IMG/VR virus record: IMGVR_UViG_3300036770_008729
Coordinates: 1 to 64,000 of that record
Reading direction: 5' to 3' (one strand)
DNA length: 64,000 nt
Numbering within the stretch: the first letter of the stretch is position 1; the number at the start of each line of letters is the position of its first letter. A model generated the notes under the pieces. That model worked only from the letters and a program-made list of their open reading frames with translations. It did not search any database and was not told where the DNA came from. The position numbers were made by a program, and so were the translations under genes. Positions 3,701 through 26,249 of this stretch are shown piece by piece.

Positions 3701-3905
3701 TAGTTCCTGTTGTGTTACCAACTGATAAAACTGATGAAAGAGAAGGAGTTGATCCTATTCCTCCTGAACCAGCTATCGGAGTAACAACTCCAAATTGATC
3801 TTTTTGCTTGATTATACCATCTAGATCATATGCCACTGTATACCCATTGGATGGTGTGGCGACCGTTGTCATGTCTACAAGATTATTAAATATAACGTAA
3901 CTCAT
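786..3905 (-). CDS. Tail fibre / adhesin-like structural protein with trimeric-autotransporter-like NTAIG/NVAVG repeats
   Basis: 1039 aa, Ser/Thr/Gly-rich; about 14-aa repeats (NTAIG, NTAVG, NVAIG); LPxxxGxxGxxLxTDGxGxxSW fibre motifs; C-terminal THNLGT..V.VQ domain. Confidence 0.75.
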   Translation of the reverse strand: MSYVIFNNLVDMTTVATPSNGYTVAYDLDGIIKQKDQFGVVTPIAGSGGIGSTPSLSSVLSVGNTTGTNDLIVASGTGIVSDYGTSKVFFSLATESHIYLSSDNGTNQESLIDLNSKNINLKSTGLDREINIGVSYNFNSDKYQEISIKENAFFSRSVNSNDRSAVFIGTKDSSFNAGVSNSVIIGGTTLTATQSNTVYLGNTVNINGQYRLPSSDGSSNQILKTDGLGNVTWQNENSSPNLATVLAVGATTGANDIIIQSGQFIKSTSGNSKIDLGIVANQLVLENGIGESISLGEKLVQIFATPSSTTQSSVSIGINNDDILVSTNLISSTSSNTDKNPIFVGSRNSSFNSGITNSVIIGGSNISATQSNTLYTSNIQLQGDVLGKYTVQPSTQPGWDSLSIPTKGYVDSVFATNVTGTGTVNFLPKWTGSTSLSSTSSFFDDGTASTSTNMSINGVYAGRGSSNISTNTVFGFEAINSSTSSGINNTAIGRNSMRSNGSGGNNTAVGLSSLQLNNTGYQNVAIGVLSLRTNSTGNDNVAIGYYSQYSNTTGFENVSIGSDSLRTNTTGTNTVAIGNQSLYFSSTGLSNVAVGYKSSYNSTTGSFNVSIGYQSLFDNRTGTSNVSVGLQNSYSLRGGNNVSVGTRGLYSSATSSNNSTIGHEVLFGNTIGSNNTAIGAYAGYESIIGNNNTFLGYNTGRGLTSGSNNTFVGSNITVSAGTTGSIFISNGSGNIRIVADSSGKIGINNLVPNTRLDVSGDLATRHSSIQNLTGTYNNYSTSDTSYIVVENSSGSPVYITGFSDGYIGKRLTITNTGPDDIIIQHNNSSSLSSNRIITGNAGTDLVVSDDESIELVYETIENRWRVNSSIFQTTTGFTGTFDNGISQISTNVYGIGGSFLQNTSIDAVSFDFTITNASTITLSASSINLGQSVVINNSYTLPNNSGVNGYLLTTDGSGLSSWTSSTSLGLTKKHKDLRTFTASVTESITHNLGTEDVFVQTFDSTGQMIIPGNIQITGTGSVDIIFSSTLTNVKTIIIG

Positions 3906-4400: not shown

Positions 4401-4472
4401 TGCGGGATAGAGCAGAGGAAGCTCGCAAGGCTCATAACCTTGAGGTCGGAGGTTCGATTCCTTCTCCCGCTA
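4401..4472 (+). tRNA. trnM: tRNA-Met(CAT), initiator-like
   Basis: Acceptor TGCGGGA/TCCCGCT with 1:72 mismatch; D-stem GAGC/GCTC (A11:U24); anticodon arm CAAGG-CTCATAA-CCTTG; T-loop TTCGATT. Confidence 0.92.
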
Positions 4473-4478
4473 CAATTG

Positions 4479-4507
4479 AAAAACCTACTTTAGAGTAGGT
4501 TTTTTTT
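4479..4507 (+). terminator. Intrinsic terminator, probably bidirectional
   Basis: AAAACCTACT-TTAG-AGTAGGTTTT plus T-run, between the tRNA and a convergent ORF. Confidence 0.8.
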
Positions 4508-4513
4508 ATTAAA

Positions 4514-5068
4514 TCAAATAAATTCATATTGTCTAATCCAGATAGTAGCAATATATTTTGTTCCTGATATAACAGGGAGACCAGCATGAATACTATCATA
4601 GTCTAAAGTTCCATCATCATTTAAATTTGACCAAACAACAATTTTAGCTGTCTCTGGTTTGATTTTTTTTCCAATACTTGGAAAGTTAGTTTCACCACCT
4701 GAAAAGTTATCATTTAAATATAAGAGTACAGTATGTGTTCTTTGTCCACCTCTTTTCATTTGTTCTTCATAGTAAGATTCACCAGGGTGAAGAAAATCAT
4801 GATGATCTTTGTATTGACCTCCTACTTCATATTTGACTATATGTATATTTTCCATATTGATAATAGGAATGCCAACAAGTGAGGAAACCATTTTTATATA
4901 TTTTGATACATACTCATCTTCATCACTTTTCAACCAACATCCATCAGCTACTCTATATCCGTCTATATTTTTACCAAGAGTAGCAGCAGGTTTAAATTTA
5001 GAGTTAGCTAAAGAAATAAACTTTTCACACAATTCAACTTCACAAAAATTGGAATATTCTTCTATCAT
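4514..5068 (-). CDS. 2OG-Fe(II) oxygenase, prolyl 4-hydroxylase alpha-like
   Basis: YEVGGQYKDHHD (HxD), RTHTVLLYLND, GGETNFP, HAGLPV..GTKYIATIWIR. Confidence 0.88.
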   Translation of the reverse strand: MIEEYSNFCEVELCEKFISLANSKFKPAATLGKNIDGYRVADGCWLKSDEDEYVSKYIKMVSSLVGIPIINMENIHIVKYEVGGQYKDHHDFLHPGESYYEEQMKRGGQRTHTVLLYLNDNFSGGETNFPSIGKKIKPETAKIVVWSNLNDDGTLDYDSIHAGLPVISGTKYIATIWIRQYEFI

Positions 5069-5069
5069 A

Positions 5070-5453
5070 TTAAAAGCTAATTTTATAATTTACTCCAACT
5101 TCTTTGGTTTCTGGATTAAGATTTAAATTCAAACCCTTAATAAATTCTGGACTAATAACAATTGTTTTATCAGGTAAAAATTTTATGAAATCAGCTACAA
5201 ATTTTTTTGGTTCTAAAATATTATTTCCTAACATATTTACTAAAACTTGCTTGTTCTGAACTCCAGTTTTTTTGATTTGAATATTATATTTGTTACAAGT
5301 GTCTATTATATTCATTGCCGGTTTATTTTTAATTATTTCCTGAGCATCTAATTTAGAAATACCCAATCCTAAAAAAGTCGCTAAAGAAAAAGCAACATTT
5401 CTTAGTTGACTTTCATTCAATTTAAAATCATCAAAACCTAACAAATATTCCAT
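5070..5453 (-). CDS. Hypothetical protein with N-terminal tag-like sequence (MEYLLGFDDFKLNES)
   Basis: 127-aa ORF; TAATATATA at 5461-5469. Confidence 0.7.
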   Translation of the reverse strand: MEYLLGFDDFKLNESQLRNVAFSLATFLGLGISKLDAQEIIKNKPAMNIIDTCNKYNIQIKKTGVQNKQVLVNMLGNNILEPKKFVADFIKFLPDKTIVISPEFIKGLNLNLNPETKEVGVNYKISF

Positions 5454-5559
5454 ATTAGCATATATATTAATAATTTGTTAACAACTTCATCATAAACAAA
5501 AATCTTTTACATGAAACAATTTGTATATTTGTAATTAAAATAAAAAAAACAAAAACAAT

Positions 5560-5937
5560 ATGAAAAAAATATCCATAAAAACTACAATTATAGTAAGTGT
5601 AGTATTAGCAGGTCTAATTGTAAGTTACTTAGTAAGTAATAACAATCATGATGTTACATGTGTAAGTAATAATAACAATCATGATGTTACATGTGTAACT
5701 AAAAATGATAATTTTGACATAACAAAAGACGGTGTATATCTGAAGGAATTCTATAAAGATAGTGATGATCCTTTTACAAAGGTAAATAAGGATACTATCC
5801 GAATACTAGATATTCAAGAATCTAAAAGAAATGGTAAATTTTATGTTAAATGGACATTTACTAAATGGAATGATACTACTAGATATATTTCTTCTGAGCT
5901 ATCATATATTGCAGAAAATACTATAAGAATCAAATAG
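5560..5937 (+). CDS. Hypothetical protein with N-terminal membrane anchor
   Basis: Hydrophobic N-terminal helix; TATATTTG at 5524-5531 upstream. Confidence 0.7.
   Translation: MKKISIKTTIIVSVVLAGLIVSYLVSNNNHDVTCVSNNNNHDVTCVTKNDNFDITKDGVYLKEFYKDSDDPFTKVNKDTIRILDIQESKRNGKFYVKWTFTKWNDTTRYISSELSYIAENTIRIK
5632..5698 (+). repeat. In-frame tandem duplication (30/33 nt)
   Basis: gtaagtaat(aat)aacaatcatgatgttacatgt present twice; encodes VSNNN(N)HDVTC x2. Confidence 0.9.
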
Positions 5938-5972
5938 TAATTTTATATATAATCTAAATACAATTTATTACT

Positions 5973-6344
5973 ATGTTAAAGATAGATTGGTATTTAGAAC
6001 AACCATACGACTTTGAATATAAAAATTATATTCTACTCGATTATGTTCAATCAGTAGATAAAAGTTATCAACTGCATCAACTGAGTCCTTATCTTCTTTG
6101 GACTGAAAAGCTTGTTTTGGAATTAAAAGATTTTCAAAAAAAAAGAATTCAATTTCTAAAAAAACTTGAAAAGGATGTTTTATTATATGAGTATGGTAAA
6201 ATTCAGATAGTTAAATCTAAAATTAAAGAGCCGGATTTTATTAAAACTATAACCGAAATAATAGACTTTTCTCAACCTATATTAGAATCAAAAGTTAAAT
6301 TTGGGTATAAATTGTTAAGTAAATATCCACAATTGCTATATTGA
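5973..6344 (+). CDS. Hypothetical protein
   Basis: 123-aa ORF, N-terminus DWYLEQPYDFEYKNYILLDY. Confidence 0.7.
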   Translation: MLKIDWYLEQPYDFEYKNYILLDYVQSVDKSYQLHQLSPYLLWTEKLVLELKDFQKKRIQFLKKLEKDVLLYEYGKIQIVKSKIKEPDFIKTITEIIDFSQPILESKVKFGYKLLSKYPQLLY

Positions 6345-6386
6345 GAAGATGTAGTACAAATATATACATCAAAAAATAATAATAGT

Positions 6387-6566
6387 ATGCCAACTAAAGA
6401 TAAAATGTTTTCTCTGAGACTTCCAGAGGAATTGTTAGAAAATTATAAAAGATTTTGCGATGAAAATTCTTTTAATATTTCTAAAAGGTTAAGAAAATTT
6501 ATGGAAAGAGATATTGAAATTTGGAAAGAAAAAATGATAAAAAAAGATAACAACTCAAATAAATAG
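6387..6566 (+). CDS. Small ribbon-helix-helix (Arc/CopG-like) DNA-binding protein
   Basis: Not in the track; 59 aa MPTKDKMFSLRLPEELLENYKRFCDENSFNISKRLRKFME..., with the RHH pattern of an alternating beta-strand then two helices. Confidence 0.7.
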   Translation: MPTKDKMFSLRLPEELLENYKRFCDENSFNISKRLRKFMERDIEIWKEKMIKKDNNSNK

Positions 6567-6570
6567 TTTA

Positions 6571-7074
6571 TTAATTCTCTTTCCAATCATCTCTATTATT
6601 TAGAAATCTTAAATCATTGGTTGTTATATTGATATTTTTGAAGTGATTAAAAAAATCAACTAATTTTTCAACTGATTCATCTGTGAAAGAAAATATACAA
6701 TCCTTACAATCCTTACAAAATTTAGTTCCGTATGTCATATTCTGGATCACATGAATTTTATTAGGTGGTTCTAAGCTAAATTCCGATACAACAAAATCAC
6801 CTAAAGTTATATCAACATCAAATCTTATACTTTTAGTTGTTGCATCTTGAACAGTGTATAAATCAATTTCAAGAGTATCAGTATATCCCCACTCATTTTC
6901 AGTATTTACATAAGTGATTTGAAACATATCGCTATTTTTCATAATATTACCTCTTTTGAATTTGTGAATTCCATATTCTTGAATAGTAAACTCTTCTGGT
7001 AATATTCTACTCAAATCTATATCATATATCATATTTGATTGAGAATAAGACTCGAATTTTTTTAAATATTTCAT
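6571..7074 (-). CDS. Hypothetical protein with N-terminal tag (MKYLKKFES); paralog of 18695-19471
   Basis: Start moved from 7134 to ATG 7074, with TAATATATA at 7080-7088; shares DIT..F(S)(L/I)EPPNKI and DESV..LV.FFN.F with 18695-19471. Confidence 0.75.
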   Translation of the reverse strand: MKYLKKFESYSQSNMIYDIDLSRILPEEFTIQEYGIHKFKRGNIMKNSDMFQITYVNTENEWGYTDTLEIDLYTVQDATTKSIRFDVDITLGDFVVSEFSLEPPNKIHVIQNMTYGTKFCKDCKDCIFSFTDESVEKLVDFFNHFKNINITTNDLRFLNNRDDWKEN

Positions 7075-7152
7075 ATCTTTATATATTAATTTTCTCTTTA
7101 TTATATTTTTCGTTATTTCGATTGTGTTAAACAAAATTTGACAATTTTTATA

Positions 7153-7161
7153 TAATATATA
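7153..7161 (+). promoter_or_regulatory. Putative late-promoter motif TAATATATA upstream of the T9SS cargo gene
   Basis: Exact 9-mer 88 nt before ATG 7250, followed by a GC-rich structured segment. Confidence 0.4.
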
Positions 7162-7249
7162 GTTTTATATGCTTTATGCTAATTAACTCGACCGGCCCAT
7201 GGTAGATGGGGGTTCCTGAAAAGGTTCTTCAATAGAGTAAAAAATATAT

Positions 7250-10200
7250 TTGATGATGAAATTTTTCAAGTACATATTTTTATCTCTGATAACCTTGTTA
7301 TCTATAAATTCTTTTTCACAAACCGCAATGCCTGCTTCTGGCACTAATGTTGGTGCATCATCGGGTAGTTGGCTAGTTCCTGCCAATGTTTATTCAATAG
7401 AAATTGATGCTTGGGGTGGTGGTGGAGCTGGTGCTGGTAAATCGACCTCAGGGACTGGTGGTTTAGCTGGTGGTGCAGGTGGATCAAGATCTACAACAAC
7501 AATTTCAGTAACACCTGGTCAAATCATATATTTTAGAGTGGCAGCCTCTAGACCCGGAACTACAGGAAATGCAGCAAACGGAAATGATACCTGGGTCAAT
7601 AAGTCATTAAATTCCGCACCTACATCTTCAACCGATGGTGTTGTCGCTAAAGGTGGGGCTAGTGCAGTTGGAACTGCTGCTGGTGTTGGTTCAACAACAG
7701 GATGTATAGGAACATCTAACCAAGGTGGTAGTGGTAGAGTCGGTGGTGTAACTGCTGGTGGTGGAGGTTCTGGTGCCGGTACGAACTTAGATGGTAATGA
7801 TGCCACAGGAACTGCTGGTGCGACCGCTCCTGCTGGTGGTGGTAATGGTGGTAATGGTCACTCATCTGGTGGTGCGGGTTCTGCTGGTTCAATTCCTGGT
7901 GGAGGAGGTGGTGGTGCCTATAAAAACAATAACACATCAAGAAGTGGAGGAGCTGGGGCAGCTGGTAGGGTTATACTTACTTATTTAGCTATTCCTAATT
8001 GTGCCTCTCTTAATGCACCATCAAACAATTCAACTGGTATTTCAACAAATCAAGTACTTAGTTGGGCTGCTGTTAGTGGTGCTACAAGTTATGATGTTTA
8101 TTTTGGTACAAGCTCTACTCCGCCTTTTGTTATAAATCAAACAGGAACATCTTATACTCCTACATTATCATATTCAACTCAATACTATTGGAAGGTAGTT
8201 GCTAAAAACTCAGCCGGTGATGCCTTAAGTTGTTCTACTTGGAACTTTACAACAAAAGATCCTGGTTGTCTTTCAGCAACCTACGGTCAGTATCCTAGTA
8301 CTACATATACACCATCTTGTATGGGAACCGTTGAGAATATAACTACTACTGGATATGCTAGTGAGTATTCGGTTGTTAGTTTACAAAATGGTGAAACTTA
8401 TACATTTTCTTCATCTAATTCTACTGATTTTATAACTATTTCTAATTCTGCTGGAACGACTGTTTTAGCATATGGCACAACACCTGTTTCGTGGACTTCT
8501 AATTTAACTGGAAATGTTAGATTTTATACACACACAAATGAGGCTTGTGGTTCTTCTACTACTGGTCGAACTAGAAGAGTTCAGTGTTCGATACCACCAC
8601 TTTGTACTTCTCTAATCTCACCTTCTGATGGATCTACTGGTCAGAGTATTGGTACTCAACTTTCTTGGCAATCTGTTTCTAATGCGAATAGTTATGATGT
8701 ATATTTTGGAACATCATCAAATCCACCTTTTATACAGAATCAGACAGGTACAACTTACTCCCCTTCATTGTCATATAATACTACCTACTACTGGAAAATA
8801 GTTCCTAAGAGTTCTGTTGGTAGTGCTACTGGTTGCTCAGTATGGTCTTTCACCACTGGTGGTCCTGGTTGCTTAAATTCTACTTATGGACAATATCCAA
8901 CATCGGTGTATAATCCAGGATGTACTGGAACACCCGAGAATATAACAACTGCTGGCTATGCTGGTGAATATTCTATGGTAACTTTAATTAGTAATGTTAA
9001 TTATACATTCTCGTCTTCTGTTGCTACTGATTTTATAACAATTAGTGATGAGTTAGGAACAACAATACTGGCTTATGGTACAGGTAGTGTTTCTTTTACT
9101 TGTCTTACTGATGGTAATTACAGATTTTATACTCACACTGATAATGCCTGTGGTTCTTCGAGTACTAGTAGAGTTAGAAGAATCCAATGTTCTACTCCAC
9201 CCCCACCGGCTAATGATTTAATTGCAAATGCACAAGATGTTGGTTTATGTGGTGGATCGTTTAATGGCAATACTAAGTTTGCTACAAATTCCGGAGATGG
9301 ACCAAGTTGTTGGACGGCTCCTTCTGAAAATTGGACAGCACCTGGTGTTTGGTACACGGTGGTTGGAAATGGTCAGAACATAACAGCATCTCTTTGTGGT
9401 TCTAATTATGATACCAAGCTATTTATTTATACAGGAACACCTGGTAGTTTGACTTGTCTTACTTACAATGATGATTTTTGCTCAACTCAATCACAAGTTA
9501 CGTTTTCATCGACATTAAATACTACTTATTATATGTTGGTTACTGGATATGGATCTGCAAAAGGTGCTTTCACATTTTCAGTAAGTTTGGATCCATCGGT
9601 TCCTGTTATATCAACAAATCCAACAAACAGCACAATTTGTCCAGGTTCAAGTTGGACATTTTCAGTTATCGCCTCTGGTAATCAAGGCCCTCTTTCTTAT
9701 CAATGGTATTTAGATGGAAATGTAATTAGTGGTGCTACTCAATCTACATATGATGCTTCGACTGCTGGTACCTACTATGTTATTGTTTCTAATAGTTGTG
9801 GTGCTACAACTCAATCAAGTAATGCTACATTAAGTTTATTTACTTTACCTACTATTACTGTTAATTCTCCTGAAATTTGTTTTGGTAATTCTACTACAAT
9901 TATTGCTTCTGGTGGCACTTCTTATAGTTGGTCAACCGGTGCCACTACCAGTTCAATATCTGTTAGTCCTATTTCAACAACTAATTATATTGTAACTGGA
10001 ACTGATGTGAATGGATGTCAGAATACAGCAACTTCAACAGTAACTGTAAATCCTAATCCATTAGTATCTCTAAACACACTATCAAGTACTATTTGTTCTG
10101 GTGGATCCGGTACTAATAACATTACAGCTACTCCGTCATCCGGTAATCCAACATATAATTATCAGTGGCAGTATTTTAATGGTACTTCTTGGGTTAATAC

Positions 10201-13200
10201 CGGTACGAATGTTAATACATTGAATGCTACTCCAAGCGCAACTAGAGAATATAGAGTTGTTATAAATGATAGTAAATCTTGTTTGGTAACTTCATCTTCT
10301 CATACGGTTACTGTGGTTCCTGATCCTATAAATCCTACATTAAATACAAAGAGTCCAAATCAAAATGATATTTGTGTTGGTACTGGAGTATCTGCTACTT
10401 TTAATTCGGGTAGTGATGGTGTTGGTTGTCAAGATATTTTTCAATATTCAATAAATAGTGGAATTAGTTGGTCTAGTTATAATCCAGGAAATACAATTTC
10501 AACATCTGGTCTAACACAAGGAACGACTGTTCAGATTAGAGGTCGTAGAGGTAATTGTAGTACTGGTATAGGGTGTTCTAATAATGCTTATGATGTATTA
10601 GTTCAGTGGACTATAGTGACTCCTCCGATTCTTTCAACAAACGTTTCTGACGTAAGTTGTAATGGTGGAAATAATGGTAACATTAATCTTACCGTATCTG
10701 GATCTGTTGGTCCTTTCTCATTTAATTGGTCAGGTCCAAATGGATTTACTTCAACTCTTGAAGACCTATCAAATGTAGAGGCTGGTAGCTATACAGTTGT
10801 TGTTTCTACACCAAGTGGTTGTCAGTCTACTACTTCAATTACAGTATCTCAGCCAAGTAATATGGTATTAACTATTGTTGGTCAAAATGTTGCTTGTAAT
10901 GGTGGTAGTTCCGGTAATATCGACTTGACTGTTAGTGGTGGTACACCTACATATACTTATTCTTGGTCTAATGGTGAGACAACTGAAGATATATCAAATT
11001 TAAGTCCTGGCTCATATACTGTAAACGTTAGTGATGCGAACGGTTGTATTGCAACATCTACAGTGTCAATATCTGAACCTTCTTTACCAATTAGTTTATC
11101 AAATACAAATCAAAATGTCCTATGTAATGGTGGTAGTGATGGTTCAATTGATCTTAATGTATCTGGTGGTACACCAGGTTATACTTATTCCTGGTCAAAT
11201 GGACAAACATCAGAGGATATTTCTGGATTGATTGCGGGAACATATTCTGTTTTGGTAACAGATTTCAATGGATGTACATCTACACTTACAACTACAATTT
11301 TACAACCATCCGCTTTAAGTAGTTCTGTCGCTGTCTATAATGTAAATTGTTATGGTCAAAATACTGGTTCAATTAACTTGACTGTTTCAGGTGGGACACC
11401 TGGTTATACTTATTTATGGTCAAATGGGCAAACATCAGCTTATGCAACGGCATTGGGAGCTGGTACCTACTCTGTGTTAATAACAGATGTTAATGGTTGT
11501 CAATCAACTAATAATGCTACTATAACTCAACCTACTTTATTGGTTGCATCTCATACTAAGGTCAATCTTACTTGTTATAATTCAAATGATGGCTCTATAA
11601 CAGTTACTGCTTCTGGTGGTACACCTCCATATACTTATGGTTGGACAAATGGTATGACAGGATCTACTATTTCTAATTTACCAGCTGGTAATTACACATC
11701 ATATGTTTCTGATTCAAAAGGTTGTACTAAATTACAAACTATAAATGTCTCACAACCCTCTGTTCTTTCTTCAAGTGTTAATAGTCCTACAATATCAACT
11801 TGTCAGACAACACCAGTTGTTATTACAGCTTCTGTTATAGGTGGAACTGCTCCATATACATATTTATGGTCTACTGGAGCAACTACTAATACAATTTCTG
11901 TTTTACCTACACAAACTACATCTTATACTATTCAAATTACTGATTCTAAAGGATGTGTTAATAATAATATCGCTACGGTAACTGTCAGTCAAACGGTTGG
12001 ACTTCCTATTGTAGGTTCGGTTTCTGGACCAACACAGGCCTATAATTATATGTTAAATGGATCTTCTGCTACTTATTCAGTTAATCCTGTTCCTGGTGCT
12101 ACTAGTTATATTTGGTATATACCAAACAATGGCGTTTGGGTTATCGGTAATAACACATCAAATATATTGACTGTTCAATTTCAATCTTATTTCACTGGTG
12201 GTGATTTTTATGTTGCAGCTCTTGATGGTTGTTCTATTAGTTATTCTGATACATTAAATGTTTCTATTTTAGATAATCCAATTATTGCCGGTTCATCTTG
12301 TGGAATACCTTCGGGTTCAATAAAGACCTACTATGTTTCAAATTCAATTCCTGGTTTAACTTATAATTGGACACCACCTTATGGTTCGGTCATTCTTTCT
12401 GGTCAGGGTAATGATACTGTTCAAATTAAATATAGTTCTTATTTTCAATCACAATCTCAATTATATGTTAATACATCTACGATATATGGTGTATTCACCG
12501 GGGAAAAGGAAATACTAAGAAACGCTTCATCACCAACTGCGATTTTAGGACCTCAATCTATTTGTGCGGATGGAACAACTATTTATGAATATTATGTTGA
12601 TTCTGTGGCTACTGCTACATCCTATATTTGGGGTGTGCCAAATGGAGTTAGTATCGTTAGTGGTCAAAGTAATGATACCATTCAGGTTAGATTTAGTACT
12701 TCATATATTGGTGGTAATTTTAGCGTGATGTCTGTAAATCAATGCGGATCTTCTCCTATGAGATATGGAACAGTTTCTAATAGTAATCAACAATTTTATC
12801 CTGGTACTATTTCTGGGCCAGGTGATCTGTGTCCTTATTTAGGAACTACAGTTACTTATAGTGTTCCTCTATCCGCAGGTTATACATATACTTGGTTAGC
12901 TCCTTCCGGTATGACAATTTTATCAGGTCAGGGAACAAATATAATAACATTACAAGTATCTAACTCTTTTACTTCTGGAACTTTGAGTGTGAAATTAAAT
13001 GAAGGTTGTGGTGATAGTCCATATTCTACTCGTAGTCTTTCAACTCAACAAACAAATATATCAGTTTCTCAAATACAAGGATTAACAAACCCTTGTTCAA
13101 TTGTTGGTACTGGTCAAACAACAACATATAGTATCACACCAATAAGTGGTGTAAACTATAACTGGTCTGTTCCGGTAAATGCTACAATAGTTTCTGGTCA

Positions 13201-14227
13201 AGGTTCAAATGTAATTAGTGTTAGTTTTCAATCCGGTTTTTCTGGAGGTGTGATAAGTGTGTTAGTTTCTGGTGGTTGTGCTAGTCCAATAACTGTGTCT
13301 AAAACTTTATCACTTGGATATCCTTCAATGACAATTCAGGGCACAAGATGTGTTGAAAATGGTTGGTCTTATAACTACTCGGTTTCTTTTCCTAGTATGG
13401 CTTATTATTATAATGTTCAGAGTTATACTTGGGTTCCACCTGCAAATGCAGTTGTTAGTAGTGGTCAGGGAACTCAAAGTGCGACTATAACTTATCCTTC
13501 AAACTTTGAGTCCAATTGTACAAACAATATGTGTGACTCAATTAAAGTATATGTTCAGTTTCCTTGTGGTGTGAAATTGGTAAAAATGAAAATTGGTATG
13601 ACAACTTATGCTGCTAGCTCAATTATTGGTCCACCTTCAACTTGTGGTCCAGATACTGTTATGTTGAATGTTGCGGTTCCTACACCAGTAAGAGCAACTG
13701 GTTATATTTGGGGTTATCCAAATGGTGCTCAATTTTTAAACCTTAATGGTGGTGGGTCTTCAAATGATACTATTTTTGCAAAGATTAATTCTACTTACTT
13801 TGGTGGTAGTTTTAGTGTTATGAGTTTTAATCAATGTGGTTCAACTCCAATGAGATATTTTACCTTACCAAAGGTTTGTCCTACTGCTATTATTATAAAT
13901 AATGATCCTGAGATATCTACTGATATAATAACTACGATGAATGATATTCTTTCGGATCCAGAATATTTGGAAAATCAAAAAAGACCTTTGGATTTTATAA
14001 CTTATCCAAATCCTGGTCAAAACATAATAAATCTTAGAATATTTAAAGGAAATTCACCTTACTATTTGATTCAAATAACTAATTTGATTGGTCAAAATGT
14101 TTATGCCAAATTACATGAGGCTGAAGATGTTATTGATATTTCTAAATTTGAAGAAGGAGTATTCTTTATTTCAATTCAGGATAATGAAGGAAATAAATTA
14201 ACTAAACAATTAGTTATTGAGAGATAA
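7250..14227 (+). CDS. Large T9SS type A sorting-domain surface protein (Gly-rich domain, FN3-like repeats, Ig, SprB repeats, PKD-like domains)
   Basis: Signal peptide ending SFS-Q; two FN3-like units (LSW..VS.A.SYDVYFGT...YYWK.V); SprB repeats (VxCNGGxxGxIxLTVSGGTPxYTYxWSNG); PKD-like units; C-terminal YPNP...N.IGQ....IDIS....G.FFI.I......T..LVIE. Confidence 0.9.
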   Translation: MMMKFFKYIFLSLITLLSINSFSQTAMPASGTNVGASSGSWLVPANVYSIEIDAWGGGGAGAGKSTSGTGGLAGGAGGSRSTTTISVTPGQIIYFRVAASRPGTTGNAANGNDTWVNKSLNSAPTSSTDGVVAKGGASAVGTAAGVGSTTGCIGTSNQGGSGRVGGVTAGGGGSGAGTNLDGNDATGTAGATAPAGGGNGGNGHSSGGAGSAGSIPGGGGGGAYKNNNTSRSGGAGAAGRVILTYLAIPNCASLNAPSNNSTGISTNQVLSWAAVSGATSYDVYFGTSSTPPFVINQTGTSYTPTLSYSTQYYWKVVAKNSAGDALSCSTWNFTTKDPGCLSATYGQYPSTTYTPSCMGTVENITTTGYASEYSVVSLQNGETYTFSSSNSTDFITISNSAGTTVLAYGTTPVSWTSNLTGNVRFYTHTNEACGSSTTGRTRRVQCSIPPLCTSLISPSDGSTGQSIGTQLSWQSVSNANSYDVYFGTSSNPPFIQNQTGTTYSPSLSYNTTYYWKIVPKSSVGSATGCSVWSFTTGGPGCLNSTYGQYPTSVYNPGCTGTPENITTAGYAGEYSMVTLISNVNYTFSSSVATDFITISDELGTTILAYGTGSVSFTCLTDGNYRFYTHTDNACGSSSTSRVRRIQCSTPPPPANDLIANAQDVGLCGGSFNGNTKFATNSGDGPSCWTAPSENWTAPGVWYTVVGNGQNITASLCGSNYDTKLFIYTGTPGSLTCLTYNDDFCSTQSQVTFSSTLNTTYYMLVTGYGSAKGAFTFSVSLDPSVPVISTNPTNSTICPGSSWTFSVIASGNQGPLSYQWYLDGNVISGATQSTYDASTAGTYYVIVSNSCGATTQSSNATLSLFTLPTITVNSPEICFGNSTTIIASGGTSYSWSTGATTSSISVSPISTTNYIVTGTDVNGCQNTATSTVTVNPNPLVSLNTLSSTICSGGSGTNNITATPSSGNPTYNYQWQYFNGTSWVNTGTNVNTLNATPSATREYRVVINDSKSCLVTSSSHTVTVVPDPINPTLNTKSPNQNDICVGTGVSATFNSGSDGVGCQDIFQYSINSGISWSSYNPGNTISTSGLTQGTTVQIRGRRGNCSTGIGCSNNAYDVLVQWTIVTPPILSTNVSDVSCNGGNNGNINLTVSGSVGPFSFNWSGPNGFTSTLEDLSNVEAGSYTVVVSTPSGCQSTTSITVSQPSNMVLTIVGQNVACNGGSSGNIDLTVSGGTPTYTYSWSNGETTEDISNLSPGSYTVNVSDANGCIATSTVSISEPSLPISLSNTNQNVLCNGGSDGSIDLNVSGGTPGYTYSWSNGQTSEDISGLIAGTYSVLVTDFNGCTSTLTTTILQPSALSSSVAVYNVNCYGQNTGSINLTVSGGTPGYTYLWSNGQTSAYATALGAGTYSVLITDVNGCQSTNNATITQPTLLVASHTKVNLTCYNSNDGSITVTASGGTPPYTYGWTNGMTGSTISNLPAGNYTSYVSDSKGCTKLQTINVSQPSVLSSSVNSPTISTCQTTPVVITASVIGGTAPYTYLWSTGATTNTISVLPTQTTSYTIQITDSKGCVNNNIATVTVSQTVGLPIVGSVSGPTQAYNYMLNGSSATYSVNPVPGATSYIWYIPNNGVWVIGNNTSNILTVQFQSYFTGGDFYVAALDGCSISYSDTLNVSILDNPIIAGSSCGIPSGSIKTYYVSNSIPGLTYNWTPPYGSVILSGQGNDTVQIKYSSYFQSQSQLYVNTSTIYGVFTGEKEILRNASSPTAILGPQSICADGTTIYEYYVDSVATATSYIWGVPNGVSIVSGQSNDTIQVRFSTSYIGGNFSVMSVNQCGSSPMRYGTVSNSNQQFYPGTISGPGDLCPYLGTTVTYSVPLSAGYTYTWLAPSGMTILSGQGTNIITLQVSNSFTSGTLSVKLNEGCGDSPYSTRSLSTQQTNISVSQIQGLTNPCSIVGTGQTTTYSITPISGVNYNWSVPVNATIVSGQGSNVISVSFQSGFSGGVISVLVSGGCASPITVSKTLSLGYPSMTIQGTRCVENGWSYNYSVSFPSMAYYYNVQSYTWVPPANAVVSSGQGTQSATITYPSNFESNCTNNMCDSIKVYVQFPCGVKLVKMKIGMTTYAASSIIGPPSTCGPDTVMLNVAVPTPVRATGYIWGYPNGAQFLNLNGGGSSNDTIFAKINSTYFGGSFSVMSFNQCGSTPMRYFTLPKVCPTAIIINNDPEISTDIITTMNDILSDPEYLENQKRPLDFITYPNPGQNIINLRIFKGNSPYYLIQITNLIGQNVYAKLHEAEDVIDISKFEEGVFFISIQDNEGNKLTKQLVIER

Positions 14228-14855
14228 ACTTTTTGTCAATTATAGCAAATGAGAAATGTTGTTTTGGTGGTAAAAAAACTATAGTTTTATCTAAAATACC
14301 TTCAAGTTTTTTTCTAATCTTATCCATGACAGATATGACATTGTCATACAAAGTTACATTCAGGTTTGTTTTTTGAACAAAAACAAAACAAGGAATCCAC
14401 CCTGAATTCAATAATTCTGGAATTTCTCTACTTTCTTCTTTTATTTTATCCTTAAAGTAACTAGAAATTGTAGGATTTTCAAACACACGAACCCAATCCA
14501 ATTTTTGATGTTTCATGCTCAATCCAACAAGAGCAGCATTAATAGATTTGAGGTACTTTAAGTCACCAATATTATTATTATTAAAATAGTCTTCAGTTCT
14601 TAAAAATTTTGTACTTAAAGTCTCACCGTTACATACTAAGTTTTGAAATCCAACTCCTGGTTTTAATAGGTAAGGACTTAAATAACCAATTGAAAATTCA
14701 GGAAATAAATCTTCTAAATCAACCAAACAATCAAAAGTATCTTCTATATTTAAATCATCAAAAGCACTTTCGATTATTTCAATACCGGATTCACAATCTT
14801 GAAGTTCAAGCTGTTCAATAAAATTATATCTTTCAAAAGTTTTGATGTATTTCAT
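14214..14855 (-). CDS. Hypothetical protein with N-terminal tag (MKYIKTFERY)
   Basis: 213-aa ORF starting 3 nt after the neck-like gene. Confidence 0.75.
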   Translation of the reverse strand: MKYIKTFERYNFIEQLELQDCESGIEIIESAFDDLNIEDTFDCLVDLEDLFPEFSIGYLSPYLLKPGVGFQNLVCNGETLSTKFLRTEDYFNNNNIGDLKYLKSINAALVGLSMKHQKLDWVRVFENPTISSYFKDKIKEESREIPELLNSGWIPCFVFVQKTNLNVTLYDNVISVMDKIRKKLEGILDKTIVFLPPKQHFSFAIIDKKFISQ

Positions 14856-14857: not shown

Positions 14858-17095
14858 TTATTCATTATATGGGAAATTCGGTAAATAAAGACGAGTAGTT
14901 GCATTGTCTGCAAAAACCAAGTATTTACTATCATCTCTAATAATATATTGATTACAAATCTTAGTGTGTTCAGATTCTGGTATAACATCTAAGAATACTC
15001 TTATGTTAGTTGCTTTCATATCAGAACCAAGTAACTCTGGATTTACTCCTTCCATCTCAAAGGTTATAGGAGTTATATCTTGTTCATTTTTATAAACTTG
15101 TTTCAATATCGTGTTTGTTAGTGTGGCTGCCTCTTCCTCCAGCTCTATATTTCTCTTATAGATGTATTGTTGCATTTTTCTCTGTCTTTGTTCTATATTA
15201 AGCACATAACAATACCATACTTCTTCATTAAGAGCATTTGTTTCATTTACAGGAACACCTGATAAATCAAAGTGGTAAGTTTCTGTGTTAAGAGTTACTA
15301 TAATAGTATCGTTTAGTAATTCAGCACTCCATCCTTTTGAGTTATCTTCATCATAATAATTAAAGAATGAATAGACTTCATCCATCACATAATTGTTAAG
15401 ATTGAACCAAATTTGAAAGCCAATATTATCTGAGACATCCAATTTTGGATCTAAGTTTTTATATCTTACCGCTGTTGTTCCCTGTTCAACGGTTGATAGA
15501 TCATAGTTAGCTTTAGCGATTATTGTAGATGAGTTTTCAATCAATTCCTTATTAATTTCTGCCATTATTTCTTGTCTAATAGGTTCCCTTGTAAGTGGTT
15601 TGAATTGGTCTTTATTAGCTATAGATGCTTTATCTTGAACATTTTCAACACCAAACAATTCATCAATAGTGCTATTCTTAGTGAGTTGGTCAAGTTTTGT
15701 CTGAATTTGTTGATTACCAGCAATAACATTTGCTTTCTGAGTGTATTTTTTCAATACAAGTTTATAATACACTGCTGAGTTATTGAAATTTCTAAATTGT
15801 TGAGCATGGTCAACTTGAAACATTCTATTCAAATTACAGAAATAAAGAAAATCCTCTTTTGATGGTCTTCTTTGTGGTCCAAATATCTCTTTGAATTGTT
15901 TTTTTGTAATGTGAACATTCATATTTTCAAATAAACTCAAATCAAATTGATTCATTACTATCTGACTATCTGGAAAGTTGTTACCATCTACTGATACTTT
16001 CATATCACCTTGACAGACTACATTGTATAATTGATATTCATGTAGAGTGTGGTCTTGGCCTTTTTTATCAGCGTCTGTGCAAAAATAAATTACTTGGTGA
16101 CCAAATACTTGCTCAGCATCAGAACTCATTTTATTTAAAAGATTAAATGCTGTATTTTGTTGATATGGATTGTAAAGTTTAGCCTTTTCATCAGCTGTCA
16201 TTTGAGGCAAACTATTAGGTGTCTCACATTGTCCACCTGAATTAGAAATCCCACCATTGTTAAGTGCTGGTATAAAATTTCCATTTGCATCGTAATATCC
16301 GGTCAAATTAGATTGACAACATTCTCTAATCCCATAAAGATTTGTTTTGAAATAGTCTTTACTAACATTTTGAAAATCACCTATTAGATTAATATCTTGA
16401 ATACTGACATTTGCATCAGAGTTGTTCTCAACTGAATATTCAATTTGAAAAAATCTAACTGGATTAATAGGAGTAGTGCTTATATTTTCTTTTGTAAATG
16501 GTTCCCAACTAGACCAGGTTCTAGAATTATCTTGTGAATATCTATATTTTATAGATACTCCAGCTGGTATTCCAGTTGATGAGATTATCTCTATATCATC
16601 TACCTTGAATACTTTAAATATATATGGAGCTTTGAAAATTTTACTTTGACCAGAAGATAAAACTATTGTACTTTCATCTGTGACAACATCTCTTTCTAGA
16701 TCGCCATTTAATTTATATTCTAACAGTCTTATATTTCCTACAGTTGAGTTTCCTCCTCTTGTCCATCTGATATCTATATTAAGTTTGTCTTTTGGATCTA
16801 CTACAGGAAAATTATCTATATTTCTTTTTAGGTCTAACCATTCTGTCCATTGAATTCCATTTCTTGATATCCTATATTCTTGTGATAGGAATCTATTATC
16901 GGTCATTCCTAATGTATCATATAAAAATAAATTAAATAATTTAACATTTTGTAAATCTGTAATACTTATTGTATATTGGTCTCCTATATTTGAAAATATT
17001 GGAGCAAAGTCGACAGATGATGTCGCCGATGTGATACTAAACTTGTATGATATAGAAATAGTACCATTTAGGTTATCAGTTGCAATATTAGGCAT
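14858..17095 (-). CDS. Virion structural protein containing a T4 gp14-like neck domain
   Basis: Central segment EQVFGHQVIYF...DHTLHEY...FDLSLFENMNVHITKKQF...RPSKEDFLYF..LNRMFQV resembles gp14-type neck proteins by pattern; TAATATATA at 17100-17108. Confidence 0.55.
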   Translation of the reverse strand: MPNIATDNLNGTISISYKFSITSATSSVDFAPIFSNIGDQYTISITDLQNVKLFNLFLYDTLGMTDNRFLSQEYRISRNGIQWTEWLDLKRNIDNFPVVDPKDKLNIDIRWTRGGNSTVGNIRLLEYKLNGDLERDVVTDESTIVLSSGQSKIFKAPYIFKVFKVDDIEIISSTGIPAGVSIKYRYSQDNSRTWSSWEPFTKENISTTPINPVRFFQIEYSVENNSDANVSIQDINLIGDFQNVSKDYFKTNLYGIRECCQSNLTGYYDANGNFIPALNNGGISNSGGQCETPNSLPQMTADEKAKLYNPYQQNTAFNLLNKMSSDAEQVFGHQVIYFCTDADKKGQDHTLHEYQLYNVVCQGDMKVSVDGNNFPDSQIVMNQFDLSLFENMNVHITKKQFKEIFGPQRRPSKEDFLYFCNLNRMFQVDHAQQFRNFNNSAVYYKLVLKKYTQKANVIAGNQQIQTKLDQLTKNSTIDELFGVENVQDKASIANKDQFKPLTREPIRQEIMAEINKELIENSSTIIAKANYDLSTVEQGTTAVRYKNLDPKLDVSDNIGFQIWFNLNNYVMDEVYSFFNYYDEDNSKGWSAELLNDTIIVTLNTETYHFDLSGVPVNETNALNEEVWYCYVLNIEQRQRKMQQYIYKRNIELEEEAATLTNTILKQVYKNEQDITPITFEMEGVNPELLGSDMKATNIRVFLDVIPESEHTKICNQYIIRDDSKYLVFADNATTRLYLPNFPYNE

Positions 17096-17143
17096 GACTT
17101 ATATATTAAATTGATAATTCTATTTAAATTTCTTCTAAATTAT

Positions 17144-18639: not shown

Positions 18640-18694
18640 TATTACAGAATTGGGTATATACAATTTGTAAAATTTACAAATTAATATATACCCT

Positions 18695-19471
18695 ATGAAG
18701 TATTTGAGAACTTTTATAGAAAATGCCGTTCCAGTAATTGGTGGAAACAAAGAATATAGAATGCAAAGTTTACCTCACAAAGGTGATCCAATAGCTTCTG
18801 ATGGTAAGATTTCTATTTTACAACAAGATTGGTTTGAAAAACTATTGCCAGATACATTAAAAGTGTCTTGTGATCCAAGATTATTTAAATTGAATTTTGA
18901 CCAATCATTAACTCCGGTTGAAAAAAAAGACTTTATTTTTGAAAAAAATGATTGTGCAATTAATAAAAGTATAATTCAGTTTAATTATTGGATGGTTCCT
19001 GATCATAATCCTGGTGAGGAATTAGAAGATGGTGAACCTTCTTGTATTGAATTTGATATATGTTCAGTTAAAACCTTAGAAGGTATAAAATTAATAGTGG
19101 ATATCACACATGGTGAAGACATTACTTTTCAGTTCTCAATTGAACCTCCTAATAAAATAAATGTTGGACATTATACCGGTGTTGGTTCTCTTTATGATAA
19201 TAAAACACATTTCGGATTCAAAGATGAATCAGTTAAGGATCTAGTTAATTTTTTTAATGCCTTCGATCATGGAATTAAATTGACCCAGAAAGATTTAGCA
19301 TTTTTAGATGAACATAGAGATAGTTATAAACATGATGTATTTAATAAAAAACATAACTATACTGATGATTCTGACTTGCTTAAATTTGGAAATTCCATGA
19401 AAGACAATGAGCCAAGTTTGAAAAATGTTCAATCATTCAGTAACTTTAATCCATCTACCATCAGTAAGTAA
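18695..19471 (+). CDS. Hypothetical protein with N-terminal tag (MKYLRTFIEN); paralog of 6571-7074
   Basis: 258 aa; TAATATATA at 18682-18690, 4 nt before the ATG. Confidence 0.75.
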   Translation: MKYLRTFIENAVPVIGGNKEYRMQSLPHKGDPIASDGKISILQQDWFEKLLPDTLKVSCDPRLFKLNFDQSLTPVEKKDFIFEKNDCAINKSIIQFNYWMVPDHNPGEELEDGEPSCIEFDICSVKTLEGIKLIVDITHGEDITFQFSIEPPNKINVGHYTGVGSLYDNKTHFGFKDESVKDLVNFFNAFDHGIKLTQKDLAFLDEHRDSYKHDVFNKKHNYTDDSDLLKFGNSMKDNEPSLKNVQSFSNFNPSTISK

Positions 19472-19819: not shown

Positions 19820-19903
19820 TACTATTTCATATATAAATTATTCATTTAGTTTAATTTTATAATTCAAAAAAATTTATTATATTTGTCATTAATATATAAT
19901 ATA

Positions 19904-23432: not shown

Positions 23433-23448
23433 AAATGTATATATTAAT

Positions 23449-26246: not shown

Positions 26247-26249
26247 CTG

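What the first reader, a model, noticed from the sequence alone, without database searches (positions are those of the whole stretch)
7250..14227. Phage-encoded 2325-aa T9SS cargo adhesin (SprB repeats plus type A CTD) among virion genes
Seen: Sec signal peptide cleaving before Gln, Gly-rich, FN3-like, Ig, SprB and PKD-like modules, and an intact YPNP...-type C-terminal sorting domain. It is flanked by phage genes and preceded by the late-type motif. Known: type A CTDs route proteins through the Bacteroidota T9SS to the cell surface, SprB-type adhesins mediate gliding and attachment, and N-terminal Gln after SPI cleavage is typical of Bacteroidota. Inference: the phage may use the host T9SS to re-coat infected cells (adhesion, aggregation, receptor masking, superinfection exclusion, grazer avoidance) or to occupy the secretion channel.
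Basis: partly seen in the sequence, partly recalled or inferred. Interest (0 to 1): 0.8.

Follow-up and report, generated by a model that had tools for sequence, protein, structure and literature searches.

The report
Jumbo phage's exported giant adhesin gene
A roughly 280-kb phage of Bacteroidota carries a 2,324-residue surface-fibre gene bearing both address labels needed for export by its host's type IX secretion system, so the virus probably re-decorates the cell it infects; phage-borne T9SS cargo has been reported before, and this is a large, conserved, fast-evolving new example.

Summary
ORF 7253-14227(+) encodes a 2,324-aa protein with these parts:
- a Sec signal peptide cleaved before Gln
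- a Gly_rich_2 domain
- FN3-like and Ig-like modules
- 6-7 SprB repeats and 6 PKD_6 repeats
- a terminal type A T9SS sorting domain, above the curated Pfam and TIGRFAM cut-offs

The modelled sorting domain is a 7-strand sandwich. Its best PDB match is the F. johnsoniae NucA CTD caught in the SprA/PorV translocon.

The gene is not a chimera:
- GC3 (0.15) equals that of the phage neighbours.
- Independent assemblies span the 5' junction.
- Twelve orthologues keep the signal peptide, the CTD and 55 of 56 cysteines. Several lie on 27-203 kb viral contigs, and three show conserved synteny.

Against a near-identical phage (flanks 93-100% nt identity), the gene and an adjacent 213-aa ORF drop to 50-76% nt. 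It is therefore a hypervariable cassette.

The N-terminal domain has the fold of phage tail-fibre tips (Pam3 fibre, Bxb1 tail tip). With C-terminal anchoring it would sit at the distal end.

Best reading: host-T9SS-exported adhesin. Its role (receptor masking or adhesion) is untested. Phage-encoded T9SS cargo was already reported (Bellas 2020; de Jonge 2019), so this is a new member of a known kind.

The parts
7152..7161 (+). Promoter-like motif ATAATATATA, a 9/10 match to the recurrent TTAATATATA
   Evidence: The motif occurs 9 times in the window against 2.0 expected. An exact copy sits at the same relative place upstream of orthologues L006 and L009. Sequence read.
7186..7238 (+). Conserved GC-rich 5' leader (candidate three-stem RNA element) upstream of the start codon
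   Evidence: The core at 7187-7217 is unique in the window. It is identical in L006 and L007 and recognisable in 9 of 10 orthologous loci. The consensus fold has 17 pairs, 2 of them with compensatory changes. There is no Rfam match, and the single-sequence folding z-score is not significant.
7253..14227 (+). Coding sequence of the 2,324-aa exported adhesin (stop codon included)
   Evidence: An identical protein, P0001, is in the public collection.
7253..7318 (+). Sec/SPI signal peptide; predicted cleavage SFS|Q leaves N-terminal Gln
   Evidence: Read from the sequence. Conserved in the orthologues examined. dN/dS 0.07-0.10. The Q-rule is described in PMC5837995.
7355..7984 (+). Gly_rich_2 (polyglycine-rich 'TG'-type) domain; putative distal binding tip
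   Evidence: Pfam 33.7 bits. AlphaFold2 model pLDDT 94.5. Foldseek: Pam3 fibre 7ypx (E=2e-6, TMq 0.56), Bxb1 tail tip, ALK/LTK TG domain. There are 235 viral matches, including annotated tail fibres.
7991..9580 (+). Two FN3-like modules, two copies of an unassigned Cys-containing module, and one further unassigned conserved module
   Evidence: Weak fn3 hit. PDB FN3 at E=0.005. 48% identity to a phage virion protein repeat. This is the most conserved part among orthologues, at 63-83% aa identity.
9581..10633 (+). Ig-like (Ig_7 / Hoc-like) modules
   Evidence: Ig_7 34.3 bits. PHROG Hoc-like and tail protein hits.
10634..12175 (+). SprB repeats (6-7 copies); copy number varies between orthologues
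   Evidence: This is the fastest-evolving part, with dN/dS 0.27-0.51.
12176..13930 (+). PKD_6 repeats (6 copies)
   Evidence: 51-56% aa identity among orthologues.
14003..14224 (+). Type A T9SS C-terminal sorting domain
   Evidence: PF18962 36.7 bits and TIGR04183 28.9 bits. Sequence match to the F. johnsoniae NucA CTD, 8glk_D, E=3e-6. Model pLDDT 92 with 7 strands. Top folds are 8glk_D, the mirolase CTD and the RemA/RemZ CTDs. Motifs are shown.
14214..14855 (-). 213-aa ORF of unknown function that co-varies with the adhesin (right end of the hypervariable cassette)
   Evidence: 60% aa identity to the L007 copy, while the next gene is 99% identical. Nucleotide identity jumps at about 14,850. 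No Pfam, PHROG or atlas assignment. Absent in L006.

Best explanation
This is a long-resident gene of a lineage of large Bacteroidota phages, and it encodes a giant secreted or surface adhesin.

Proposed route (inferred):
1. In the infected cell the precursor crosses the inner membrane through Sec. Signal peptidase I then exposes an N-terminal Gln.
2. About 25 beta-sandwich modules fold in the periplasm, with conserved paired cysteines.
3. The C-terminal type A domain docks on the host's PorV/SprA translocon, and the host T9SS moves the protein across the outer membrane.
4. The CTD is then removed. The fibre is either linked by its C-terminus to a surface lipopolysaccharide or released.

If the fibre is anchored, the N-terminal glycine-rich domain lies at the distal tip. 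This domain has the same fold that phages use at tail-fibre tips.

What is shown here: the gene's anatomy, its conservation, its phage residency and its status as a hypervariable cassette.

What is inferred: export through the T9SS, surface display, and the role. The most likely role is binding a host-surface or environmental ligand. That could mask or compete with receptors (superinfection exclusion, or protection of progeny from debris). It could instead make infected cells stick to particles or to neighbouring cells.
For: Cargo signature
- The signal peptide and the type A CTD are both present and pass curated cut-offs.
- The CTD model is a 7-strand sandwich (pLDDT 92).
- Its best PDB matches are experimentally trapped T9SS substrates: NucA 8glk_D (TMq 0.75), RemA and RemZ CTDs, and the mirolase CTD.
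- The sequence match to the NucA CTD has E=3e-6.
- The (F/Y)PNP motif, the two conserved Gly residues and the near-C-terminal Lys are present. The Lys is stated to be functionally important in PMC10994853.

Exported rather than cytoplasmic
- 55 of 56 Cys are conserved, about two per module, with none in the signal peptide or CTD.

Selection
- dN/dS is 0.07-0.10 for the signal peptide and 0.12-0.23 for the CTD.

Phage residency
- GC3 is 0.151 against 0.14-0.25 in neighbours. The higher overall GC comes entirely from GC2.
- Logan contigs of 8.6 and 21.8 kb from two samples lie on it with 0 differences. An independent study's contig crosses the 5' junction.
- Orthologues at 43-68% identity lie on 27-203 kb IMG/VR contigs and on ENA/JGI contigs, all running from signal peptide to CTD.
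- Synteny on both sides is conserved.
- No full-length orthologue was found in 185,579 bacterial species genomes.

Interface gene
- Flanks are 93-100% nt identical to L007, but the cassette is only 50-76% identical.

Tip domain
- The N-terminal domain has the fold of phage fibre tips.

Precedent
- Bacterial chromosomes carry the same signal peptide/Gly_rich_2/.../type A CTD layout.
- A 642-kb phage encodes a 13-repeat SprB protein with a signal peptide and a type B CTD.
- Phage T9SS cargo was reported in PMC7468147 and PMC6949934.
Against: - There is no experimental or expression evidence: no RNA run was listed.
- The host is unknown, so the presence of a T9SS in it is only inferred.
- Several traits also fit a tail fibre or decoration protein: Hoc-like and tail PHROG hits, a fibre-tip fold at one end, hypervariability, and neighbours that look like virion genes.
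- dS is near saturation (about 1), so the dN/dS values are rough.
- The signal peptide was judged by rule, not by a trained predictor.
- Whether the product is anchored or released cannot be told from sequence.
Confidence: 0.75

Rival explanations
1. It is a virion component (tail fibre or head/tail decoration). The signal-like N-terminus and the CTD-like C-terminus would then be vestiges or serve in assembly.
For: - PHROG hits to Hoc-like decoration and tail proteins over the Ig and SprB regions.
- The N-terminal domain folds like the Pam3 fibre and the Bxb1 tail tip and like annotated tail fibres.
- The FN3-like module is shared with a podovirus-type virion protein.
- The gene is a hypervariable cassette next to a Gp88/neck-like gene.
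Against: - Tailed-phage virions assemble in the cytoplasm (established knowledge).
- A cleavable Sec signal peptide and a T9SS CTD are both under purifying selection in all orthologues.
- 55 conserved cysteines point to extracytoplasmic folding.
- The fibre-tip fold is at the N-terminus, the wrong end for a fibre attached by its N-terminus.
- No virion-attachment domain was detected.
Confidence: 0.08
2. It is host DNA joined to phage DNA by misassembly, or a very recent passenger picked up from the host.
For: Overall GC of the ORF (36%) exceeds that of its flanks (24-31%). The SprB, PKD and CTD modules are typical of Bacteroidota chromosomes.
Against: - GC3 and synonymous codon choice equal those of the phage genes.
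- Depth is flat and contigs span the junction in three assemblies.
- Synteny is kept in relatives at 58-62% identity.
- The best bacterial full-length hits are only 32-41% identical over about 35% of the protein.
- No orthologue was found in the species-level genome collection.
Confidence: 0.02
3. The protein is exported as proposed, but its purpose is to saturate the T9SS translocon and PorV shuttle. Host adhesins or phage receptors such as SprB-type filaments would then no longer reach the surface. This would halt gliding and exclude other phages.
For: In Flavobacterium, phage resistance maps to gliding and T9SS genes, as the titles and abstracts of papers found state (PMC9804748; bioRxiv 10.1101/2020.10.02.323337). 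This implies that T9SS-dependent surface structures serve as receptors. The protein is very large and carries a bona fide CTD.
Against: A 25-module, cysteine-stabilised fibre with a conserved binding-type tip is far more than a plug would need. The N-terminal half is under the strongest constraint. There are no data on expression level.
Confidence: 0.1

Closest known systems
T9SS type A CTD cargo genes of 'Cryophage' (Bellas et al. 2020, PMC7468147)
   Same: Encoded by an uncultured Bacteroidota phage. Carries a type A sorting domain. Highly variable between otherwise near-identical phage genomes. Proposed to hijack the host T9SS.
   Different: Those payloads are enzymes or a PA14 protein (endoglucanase, GH39). 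Here the payload is a 2,324-aa multi-repeat adhesin with a fibre-tip-type domain. It is conserved across a clade of 27 to 281-kb contigs and has its own conserved 5' leader.
crAss-like phage BACON-repeat ORF with a T9SS sorting domain (de Jonge et al. 2019, PMC6949934)
   Same: A phage ORF that combines carbohydrate-binding or Ig-like repeats with a T9SS sorting domain.
   Different: Gut crAss-like phages; a different repeat family. Only one case was noted, and conservation and junctions were not analysed.
Flavobacterium johnsoniae SprB gliding adhesin
   Same: Shares SprB repeats (PF13573) and is a long T9SS-exported surface filament.
   Different: SprB-type relatives carry the type B CTD (PF13585), as do nearly all the 3,000-4,000-aa bacterial hits. 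This protein has a type A CTD and no CHU_C hit. It is a third of SprB's size and 32-41% identical only across the repeats.
Type A CTD substrates of F. johnsoniae (NucA, RemA, RemZ) seen in the SprA/PorV translocon (Lauber et al. 2024, PMC10994853)
   Same: The CTD is the closest relative by sequence and by fold, including the conserved Lys. RemA and RemZ are themselves surface adhesins.
   Different: Those are host chromosomal genes, and their passenger domains are unrelated.
Bacterial signal peptide/Gly_rich_2/Ig/type A CTD giants (e.g. P0175; cluster of P0167/P0274)
   Same: Same order of parts: signal peptide, glycine-rich domain directly after it, Ig-type repeats, type A CTD. P0274 lies beside FtsK, LolA and UvrB, i.e. 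on a chromosome.
   Different: Only 40-47% identical in the glycine-rich domain. They lack the FN3-like/unassigned-module block and the conserved motifs used for the genome scan.
Phage tail-fibre glycine-rich tips (cyanophage Pam3 fibre 7YPX, Bxb1 tail tip 9D93) and the ALK/LTK TG domain
   Same: Same fold as the N-terminal domain. These domains occupy distal, ligand-facing positions.
   Different: In those phages the domain is part of the virion. Here it heads an exported protein.
1,670-aa SprB-repeat protein of the 642-kb phage LR756502
   Same: Encoded by a huge phage. Signal peptide followed by Gln, 13 SprB repeats, PKD domain, T9SS CTD.
   Different: Type B (CHU_C) CTD, no glycine-rich domain, 31% identity. 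It looks like an independent acquisition.
T5 Llp receptor-blocking lipoprotein (functional analogy, from general knowledge)
   Same: A phage-encoded exported protein that acts at the cell surface and co-varies with receptor specificity.
   Different: Small lipoprotein, no homology, different export route. Analogy only.

Membership tests
T9SS type A CTD cargo (TIGR04183 / PF18962) | Sorting domain at the extreme C-terminus scoring above the curated thresholds | tested here: met
   PF18962 36.7 bits against 27, residues 2251-2322 of 2324. TIGR04183 28.9 bits against 23.
T9SS type A CTD cargo (TIGR04183 / PF18962) | Seven-stranded beta-sandwich fold of the CTD | tested here: met
   AlphaFold2 pLDDT 92 with seven strands. 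Top Foldseek hits are the NucA, mirolase, RemA and RemZ CTDs, TMq 0.67-0.78.
T9SS type A CTD cargo (TIGR04183 / PF18962) | Conserved motifs: (F/Y)PNP, Gly in the middle strands, G(V/I)(Y/F), near-C-terminal Lys | tested here: met
   Alignment A3 has invariant P, N, P and two Gly residues. KLTKQLVI lies at the end and aligns to the NucA CTD. One orthologue, P0004, has Arg in place of the Lys.
T9SS type A CTD cargo (TIGR04183 / PF18962) | N-terminal Sec signal peptide for entry into the periplasm | tested here: met
   Judged by rule on the sequence. Conserved in orthologues. No trained predictor was available.
T9SS type A CTD cargo (TIGR04183 / PF18962) | Secretion depends on the T9SS and the CTD is cleaved off | not testable with these tools
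   Needs expression in wild-type and T9SS-mutant Bacteroidota.
T9SS type A CTD cargo (TIGR04183 / PF18962) | The producing cell has a T9SS | not testable with these tools
   The host is unknown. A Bacteroidota host is inferred from the Q-rule signal peptide, the CTD itself and the relatedness to huge phages.
SprB gliding adhesin (orthologue of F. johnsoniae SprB) | SprB repeats | tested here: met
   PF13573, 6-7 copies.
SprB gliding adhesin (orthologue of F. johnsoniae SprB) | Type B (CHU_C / gliding-motility-associated) CTD | tested here: not met
   No PF13585 hit. An ad hoc type B HMM hits LR756502 and L015 ORFs but not this protein.
Phage tail fibre / Hoc-like decoration protein | Made and assembled in the cytoplasm: no export signals | tested here: not met
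   Signal peptide, CTD and 55 conserved Cys.
Phage tail fibre / Hoc-like decoration protein | Ig-like or fibre-tip domains shared with virion proteins | tested here: met
   PHROG 2973, 3995 and 4069. Fibre-tip fold.
Phage-encoded variable T9SS cargo (as in Cryophage) | Resident in a phage genome | tested here: met
Phage-encoded variable T9SS cargo (as in Cryophage) | Far more divergent than the flanking core genes between close phage variants | tested here: met
   Identity of 58-64% aa, against 93-99% aa for neighbours. The switch is sharp at about 14,850.

The most novel reading that the evidence does not exclude
The exported fibre presents a phage receptor-binding module on the surface of the infected cell. 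Its tip has the tail-fibre fold, and the gene evolves as a swap-prone cassette, as receptor-binding genes do.

Infected cells might therefore bind the same surface ligand that virions recognise. Two versions are possible. In one, the fibre masks that ligand on the infected cell itself and on debris (an Llp-like strategy run through the T9SS). In the other, it tethers uninfected host cells, so that the burst lands on new hosts.
Probability: 0.15. Interest if true: 0.85.

Novelty: new member of a known kind. Interest (0 to 1): 0.5.

Why it matters
T9SS hijacking by phages has been proposed from metagenomes but never shown experimentally. This family is a clean test case, for several reasons:
- Its CTD is closest to F. 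johnsoniae substrates that have been trapped in the translocon.
- It is kept by a whole clade of large freshwater and subsurface phages.
- It is the most variable locus between near-identical genomes, which marks it as a front line of phage-host or phage-phage conflict.

If the export is confirmed, it would show that jumbo phages remodel the outer surface of the infected Bacteroidota cell. That would bear on aggregation, particle attachment, gliding and superinfection in aquatic communities.

Tried and rejected
- GC anomaly as a sign of foreign origin: rejected. GC3 and codon choice match the phage.
- Other type A CTD ORFs in the 64-kb window: none found with an ad hoc HMM. Sensitivity was limited, and the other 217 kb of the contig were not available.
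- A second Gly_rich_2 copy in the window, such as a true tail fibre with the same tip: none.
- Rfam match for the conserved leader: none. Single-sequence folding energy is not better than shuffles.
- Enrichment of the Bacteroidota O-glycosylation motif D(S/T)(A/I/L/M/T/V): 7 sites against 6.9 expected, so no signal.
- My provisional 'PPC-like' label for residues 650-776: no Pfam support. I now call it unassigned.
- RNA runs holding the gene: none was listed.
- The 213-aa co-varying ORF: no family or fold assignment.
- Assignment of the phage to the 'moraphages' (PMC12619734): plausible, because an orthologue-bearing 203-kb contig encodes DnaK. No identifiers matched, however, so I make no claim.

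Full report
**What is there**

The window holds an uninterrupted ORF at 7250-14227(+). The probable start is ATG 7253 or 7256; the identical database protein P0001 begins at MKFF.

Pfam places these domains on the protein:
- Gly_rich_2 at residues 35-244
- six SprB repeats
- six PKD_6 repeats
- Por_Secre_tail at residues 2251-2322 (36.7 bits, cut-off 27)

NCBIfam TIGR04183 agrees on the sorting domain (28.9 bits against 23). When the segments are scanned alone, Ig_7 passes its cut-off and a seventh SprB repeat appears.

The two 'FN3-like' modules are only weakly supported by profiles. They are, however, 48% identical to a repeat in a virion protein of small phages. Three modules between residues 337 and 776 remain unassigned.

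The N-terminus reads as a classical SPI signal peptide with cleavage SFS|Q. That follows the Bacteroidota Q-rule (PMC5837995), which phages of Porphyromonas also obey (PMC10367356).

**Is it really phage DNA?**

The window is the first 64 kb of a 281,114-bp IMG/VR contig. Several lines support a phage origin:
- At the DNA level the region resembles only the 635-735 kb uncultured huge phages.
- Upstream, 786-3905(-) hits virion-structural and tail-spike PHROGs.
- Downstream, 14858-17095(-) belongs to a virus-only 'Gp88 family' with neck-protein neighbours in feature space.
- A ClpB-like protease, a gp32-like SSB and two tRNA-Met genes lie further on.

The ORF's overall GC (36%) exceeds that of its flanks. 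This is entirely a second-codon-position effect of a Ser/Thr/Gly-rich protein. GC3 is 0.151 against 0.14-0.25 in 18 other ORFs, and synonymous codon choice is the same.

Logan contigs of 8,621 and 21,849 bp from two samples lie on 5670-10300 and 4428-10300 with no differences and flat depth. A 1,462-bp contig from an unrelated freshwater study crosses the 5' junction at 96% identity.

The chimera hypothesis is therefore rejected.

**A conserved family of large phages**

Twelve further orthologues keep the whole architecture:
- P0003, P0004, P0008/L007, P0012/L006, P0025/L009 and P0105
- L014-L019, on viral contigs of 27-203 kb

They are 43-68% identical to the window protein, and every complete copy runs from signal peptide to CTD (L018 is cut short by its contig end).

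Synteny is kept on both sides:
- The 745-aa gene and an M28 peptidase follow the gene in L006, L007 and the P0003 contig.
- A paralogue-family ORF precedes it in L006.

These are documented.

A scan of one genome for each of 185,579 bacterial species found no full-length orthologue. Only 38-42% matches to one module turned up, in Chryseobacterium and Weeksellaceae.

Nei-Gojobori estimates indicate purifying selection everywhere. dS is near saturation, so the values are rough:

| Region | dN/dS |
|---|---|
| Signal peptide | 0.07-0.10 |
| CTD | 0.12-0.23 |
| SprB repeats | 0.27-0.51 |
| PKD_6 repeats | 0.13-0.46 |

Of 56 cysteines, 55 are conserved, about two per module, and none lies in the signal peptide or CTD. 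That pattern suits a protein that folds outside the cytoplasm.

**The sorting domain**

Its nearest solved relative by sequence is chain D of 8GLK (E=3e-6). This is the CTD of F. johnsoniae NucA bound to the SprA/PorV translocon (PMC10994853).

An AlphaFold2 model (pLDDT 92) has seven strands. Its best structural matches are 8glk_D, the mirolase CTD and the RemA and RemZ CTDs.

The (F/Y)PNP motif, the conserved glycines and the near-terminal lysine are present. That paper singles out the lysine as the only conserved contact.

According to the same paper, type A substrates leave the translocon on PorV. They are then either released or attached to a surface lipopolysaccharide.

**The other end**

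The glycine-rich domain models with pLDDT 94.5. It matches the cyanophage Pam3 fibre, Bxb1 tail-tip proteins and the ALK/LTK TG domain. In the viral structure library it has 235 matches, including annotated tail fibres and Syn9 gp38.

The domain is not exclusive to phages, however. An exhaustive profile search gave 1,412 relatives. Among the best 148, 35 end in a type A CTD and many begin with a signal peptide. At least one relative lies on a bacterial chromosome beside FtsK, LolA and UvrB.

The layout 'signal peptide, glycine-rich domain, Ig repeats, CTD' is thus an existing Bacteroidota surface-protein design that this phage lineage owns a version of. With C-terminal anchoring, the fibre-tip fold would be distal. 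This last point is an inference.

**A hypervariable cassette**

L007 comes from a phage whose neighbouring genes are nearly identical to the window's:

| Gene | aa identity, window vs L007 |
|---|---|
| 745-aa protein | 99% |
| M28 peptidase | 93% |
| 258-aa ORF | 98% |
| Adhesin | 58-64% |
| 213-aa ORF on the opposite strand | 60% |

Nucleotide identity in 150-nt windows is 50-76% left of about 14,850 and mostly 91-100% to the right.

On the left side, the differences listed for the independent X4 contig all fall inside the coding sequence rather than upstream of it.

Within the protein the N-terminal half is the most conserved (63-83%). The SprB and PKD_6 arrays are the least conserved (46-60%), and repeat and module numbers differ between orthologues.

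This is the behaviour that Bellas et al. described for the T9SS-CTD genes of 'Cryophage'. It is typical of genes at a host or competitor interface.

**Regulation**

A 10-mer, TTAATATATA, occurs 9 times in the window against 2.0 expected. It usually lies 5-8 nt before a start codon.

Before this gene the motif sits 76-101 nt upstream. It is exact in L006 and L009 and matches 9/10 at 7152-7161. It is followed by a GC-rich leader at 7186-7238.

The leader is unique in the window. Its core is identical in relatives whose proteins are only about 60% identical, and it is recognisable in 9 of 10 loci.

A consensus fold gives three stems with two compensatory pairs. There is no Rfam match, and single-sequence folding energy is unremarkable.

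I regard the leader as a candidate cis-regulatory element. I cannot say whether the promoter is 'late'.

**Interpretation**

The best-supported reading (0.75) is a phage-encoded protein exported by Sec and the host T9SS, which ends on the cell surface or in the medium.

The virion-fibre alternative (0.08) explains the Hoc-like hits, the fibre-tip fold, the neighbourhood and the variability. It does not explain a conserved cleavable signal peptide, a conserved CTD and 55 conserved cysteines in a particle assembled in the cytoplasm.

Chimera or recent capture (0.02) is contradicted by the data above.

What the fibre does is open. Options are receptor masking or superinfection exclusion, adhesion of infected cells to particles or neighbours, or competition for the translocon.

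In Flavobacterium, phage resistance maps to gliding and T9SS genes (papers found). This gives the first and third options a rationale. The strong constraint on a binding-type tip argues for a specific ligand rather than a mere plug.

**Comparison and novelty**

The protein is not an SprB orthologue. It has a type A rather than a type B CTD, is one third of SprB's length, and is similar only across the repeats.

Phage-encoded T9SS cargo has been described computationally in Cryophage (enzymes and a PA14 protein) and in a crAss-like cluster.

- A 1,670-aa SprB-repeat protein with a signal peptide and a type B CTD in the 642-kb phage LR756502.
- Small PKD_6 and CHU_C ORFs beside the orthologue in L015.

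The present gene is therefore a new member of a known kind. It is notable for its size, its clade-wide conservation, its cassette behaviour, its fibre-tip domain and its private 5' leader. No experiment has yet shown T9SS export of any phage protein.

Noticed in passing
window 7186-7238: A GC-rich 5' leader is conserved upstream of the adhesin in 9 of 10 orthologous loci. The predicted fold has three stems and two compensatory pairs, and there is no Rfam family. It is a candidate new cis-regulatory RNA.
   Followed up: partly
window 5461-5470, 7080-7089, 17100-17109, 18681-18690, 19889-19898, 23438-23447, 25257-25266, 58907-58916, 61638-61647: TTAATATATA occurs 9 times against 2.0 expected, mostly 5-8 nt upstream of start codons. 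This suggests a phage promoter giving leaderless or very short-leader mRNAs. The timing class is unknown.
   Followed up: partly
window 30098-49238 (+ strand): A long co-oriented glycan-biosynthesis cluster. It includes two GT10 fucosyltransferases, a GT47 exostosin-like enzyme, a GT4-type transferase, GDP-mannose-4,6-dehydratase-type epimerases, a GHMP kinase and a nucleotidyl transferase. It could modify surface glycans, the virion or DNA. No link to the adhesin was shown.
   Followed up: partly
window 6571-7134(-) and 18695-19471(+): Two paralogous ORFs (35% aa identity, E=5e-17) lie in inverted orientation. They bracket the 11.5-kb block of adhesin, 213-aa ORF, Gp88-like gene and M28 peptidase. 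A 48-nt inverted repeat (81% complementary) lies within them. L006 has one homologue directly upstream of its adhesin.
   Followed up: partly
window 4475 to 7186 (run X5): One contig in an independent freshwater run joins the end of tRNA-Met (4475) to the start of the conserved leader (7186), skipping 2,710 nt. Only 29 letters lie on the shorter side, so this is weak. It may be a variant lacking ORFs 4514-7134.
   Followed up: no
window 4401-4473 and 26173-26247: Two tRNA-Met (CAT) genes. The first is 85% identical to a stretch of the 635-kb phage LR745206.
   Followed up: no
L008 6222-11234 (LR756502.1 514378-519390): The 642-kb huge phage encodes a 1,670-aa protein with a signal peptide followed by Gln, 13 SprB repeats, a PKD domain and a CHU_C type B T9SS CTD. 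Its neighbours are SpoVR-like, glutamate-synthase-domain and NIF-phosphatase genes.
   Followed up: partly
L015 17340-18466: Directly downstream of the orthologous adhesin, a 185-aa PKD_6 ORF and a 189-aa CHU_C (type B CTD) ORF occur. They may be a second, small or split T9SS cargo.
   Followed up: no
L016 308-5250 and 17658-18596: The 203-kb contig carrying an orthologue also encodes DnaK/HSP70, a PAS-domain histidine kinase and a thymidylate synthase. DnaK recalls the 'moraphages' of PMC12619734, but membership was not verified.
   Followed up: partly
window 7245-7252: TATATTTG, which fits the Bacteroidota -7 promoter consensus TAnnTTTG (general knowledge), abuts the ATG at 7253. Similar octamers precede other ORFs. 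The exact octamer is not kept in L006 or L007.
   Followed up: no
window 27826-29994 and 54204-55211: A ClpA/B-type ATP-dependent protease (phrog_4871, E=5e-251) and a gp32-like single-strand DNA-binding protein. Both are typical jumbo-phage cargo.
   Followed up: no
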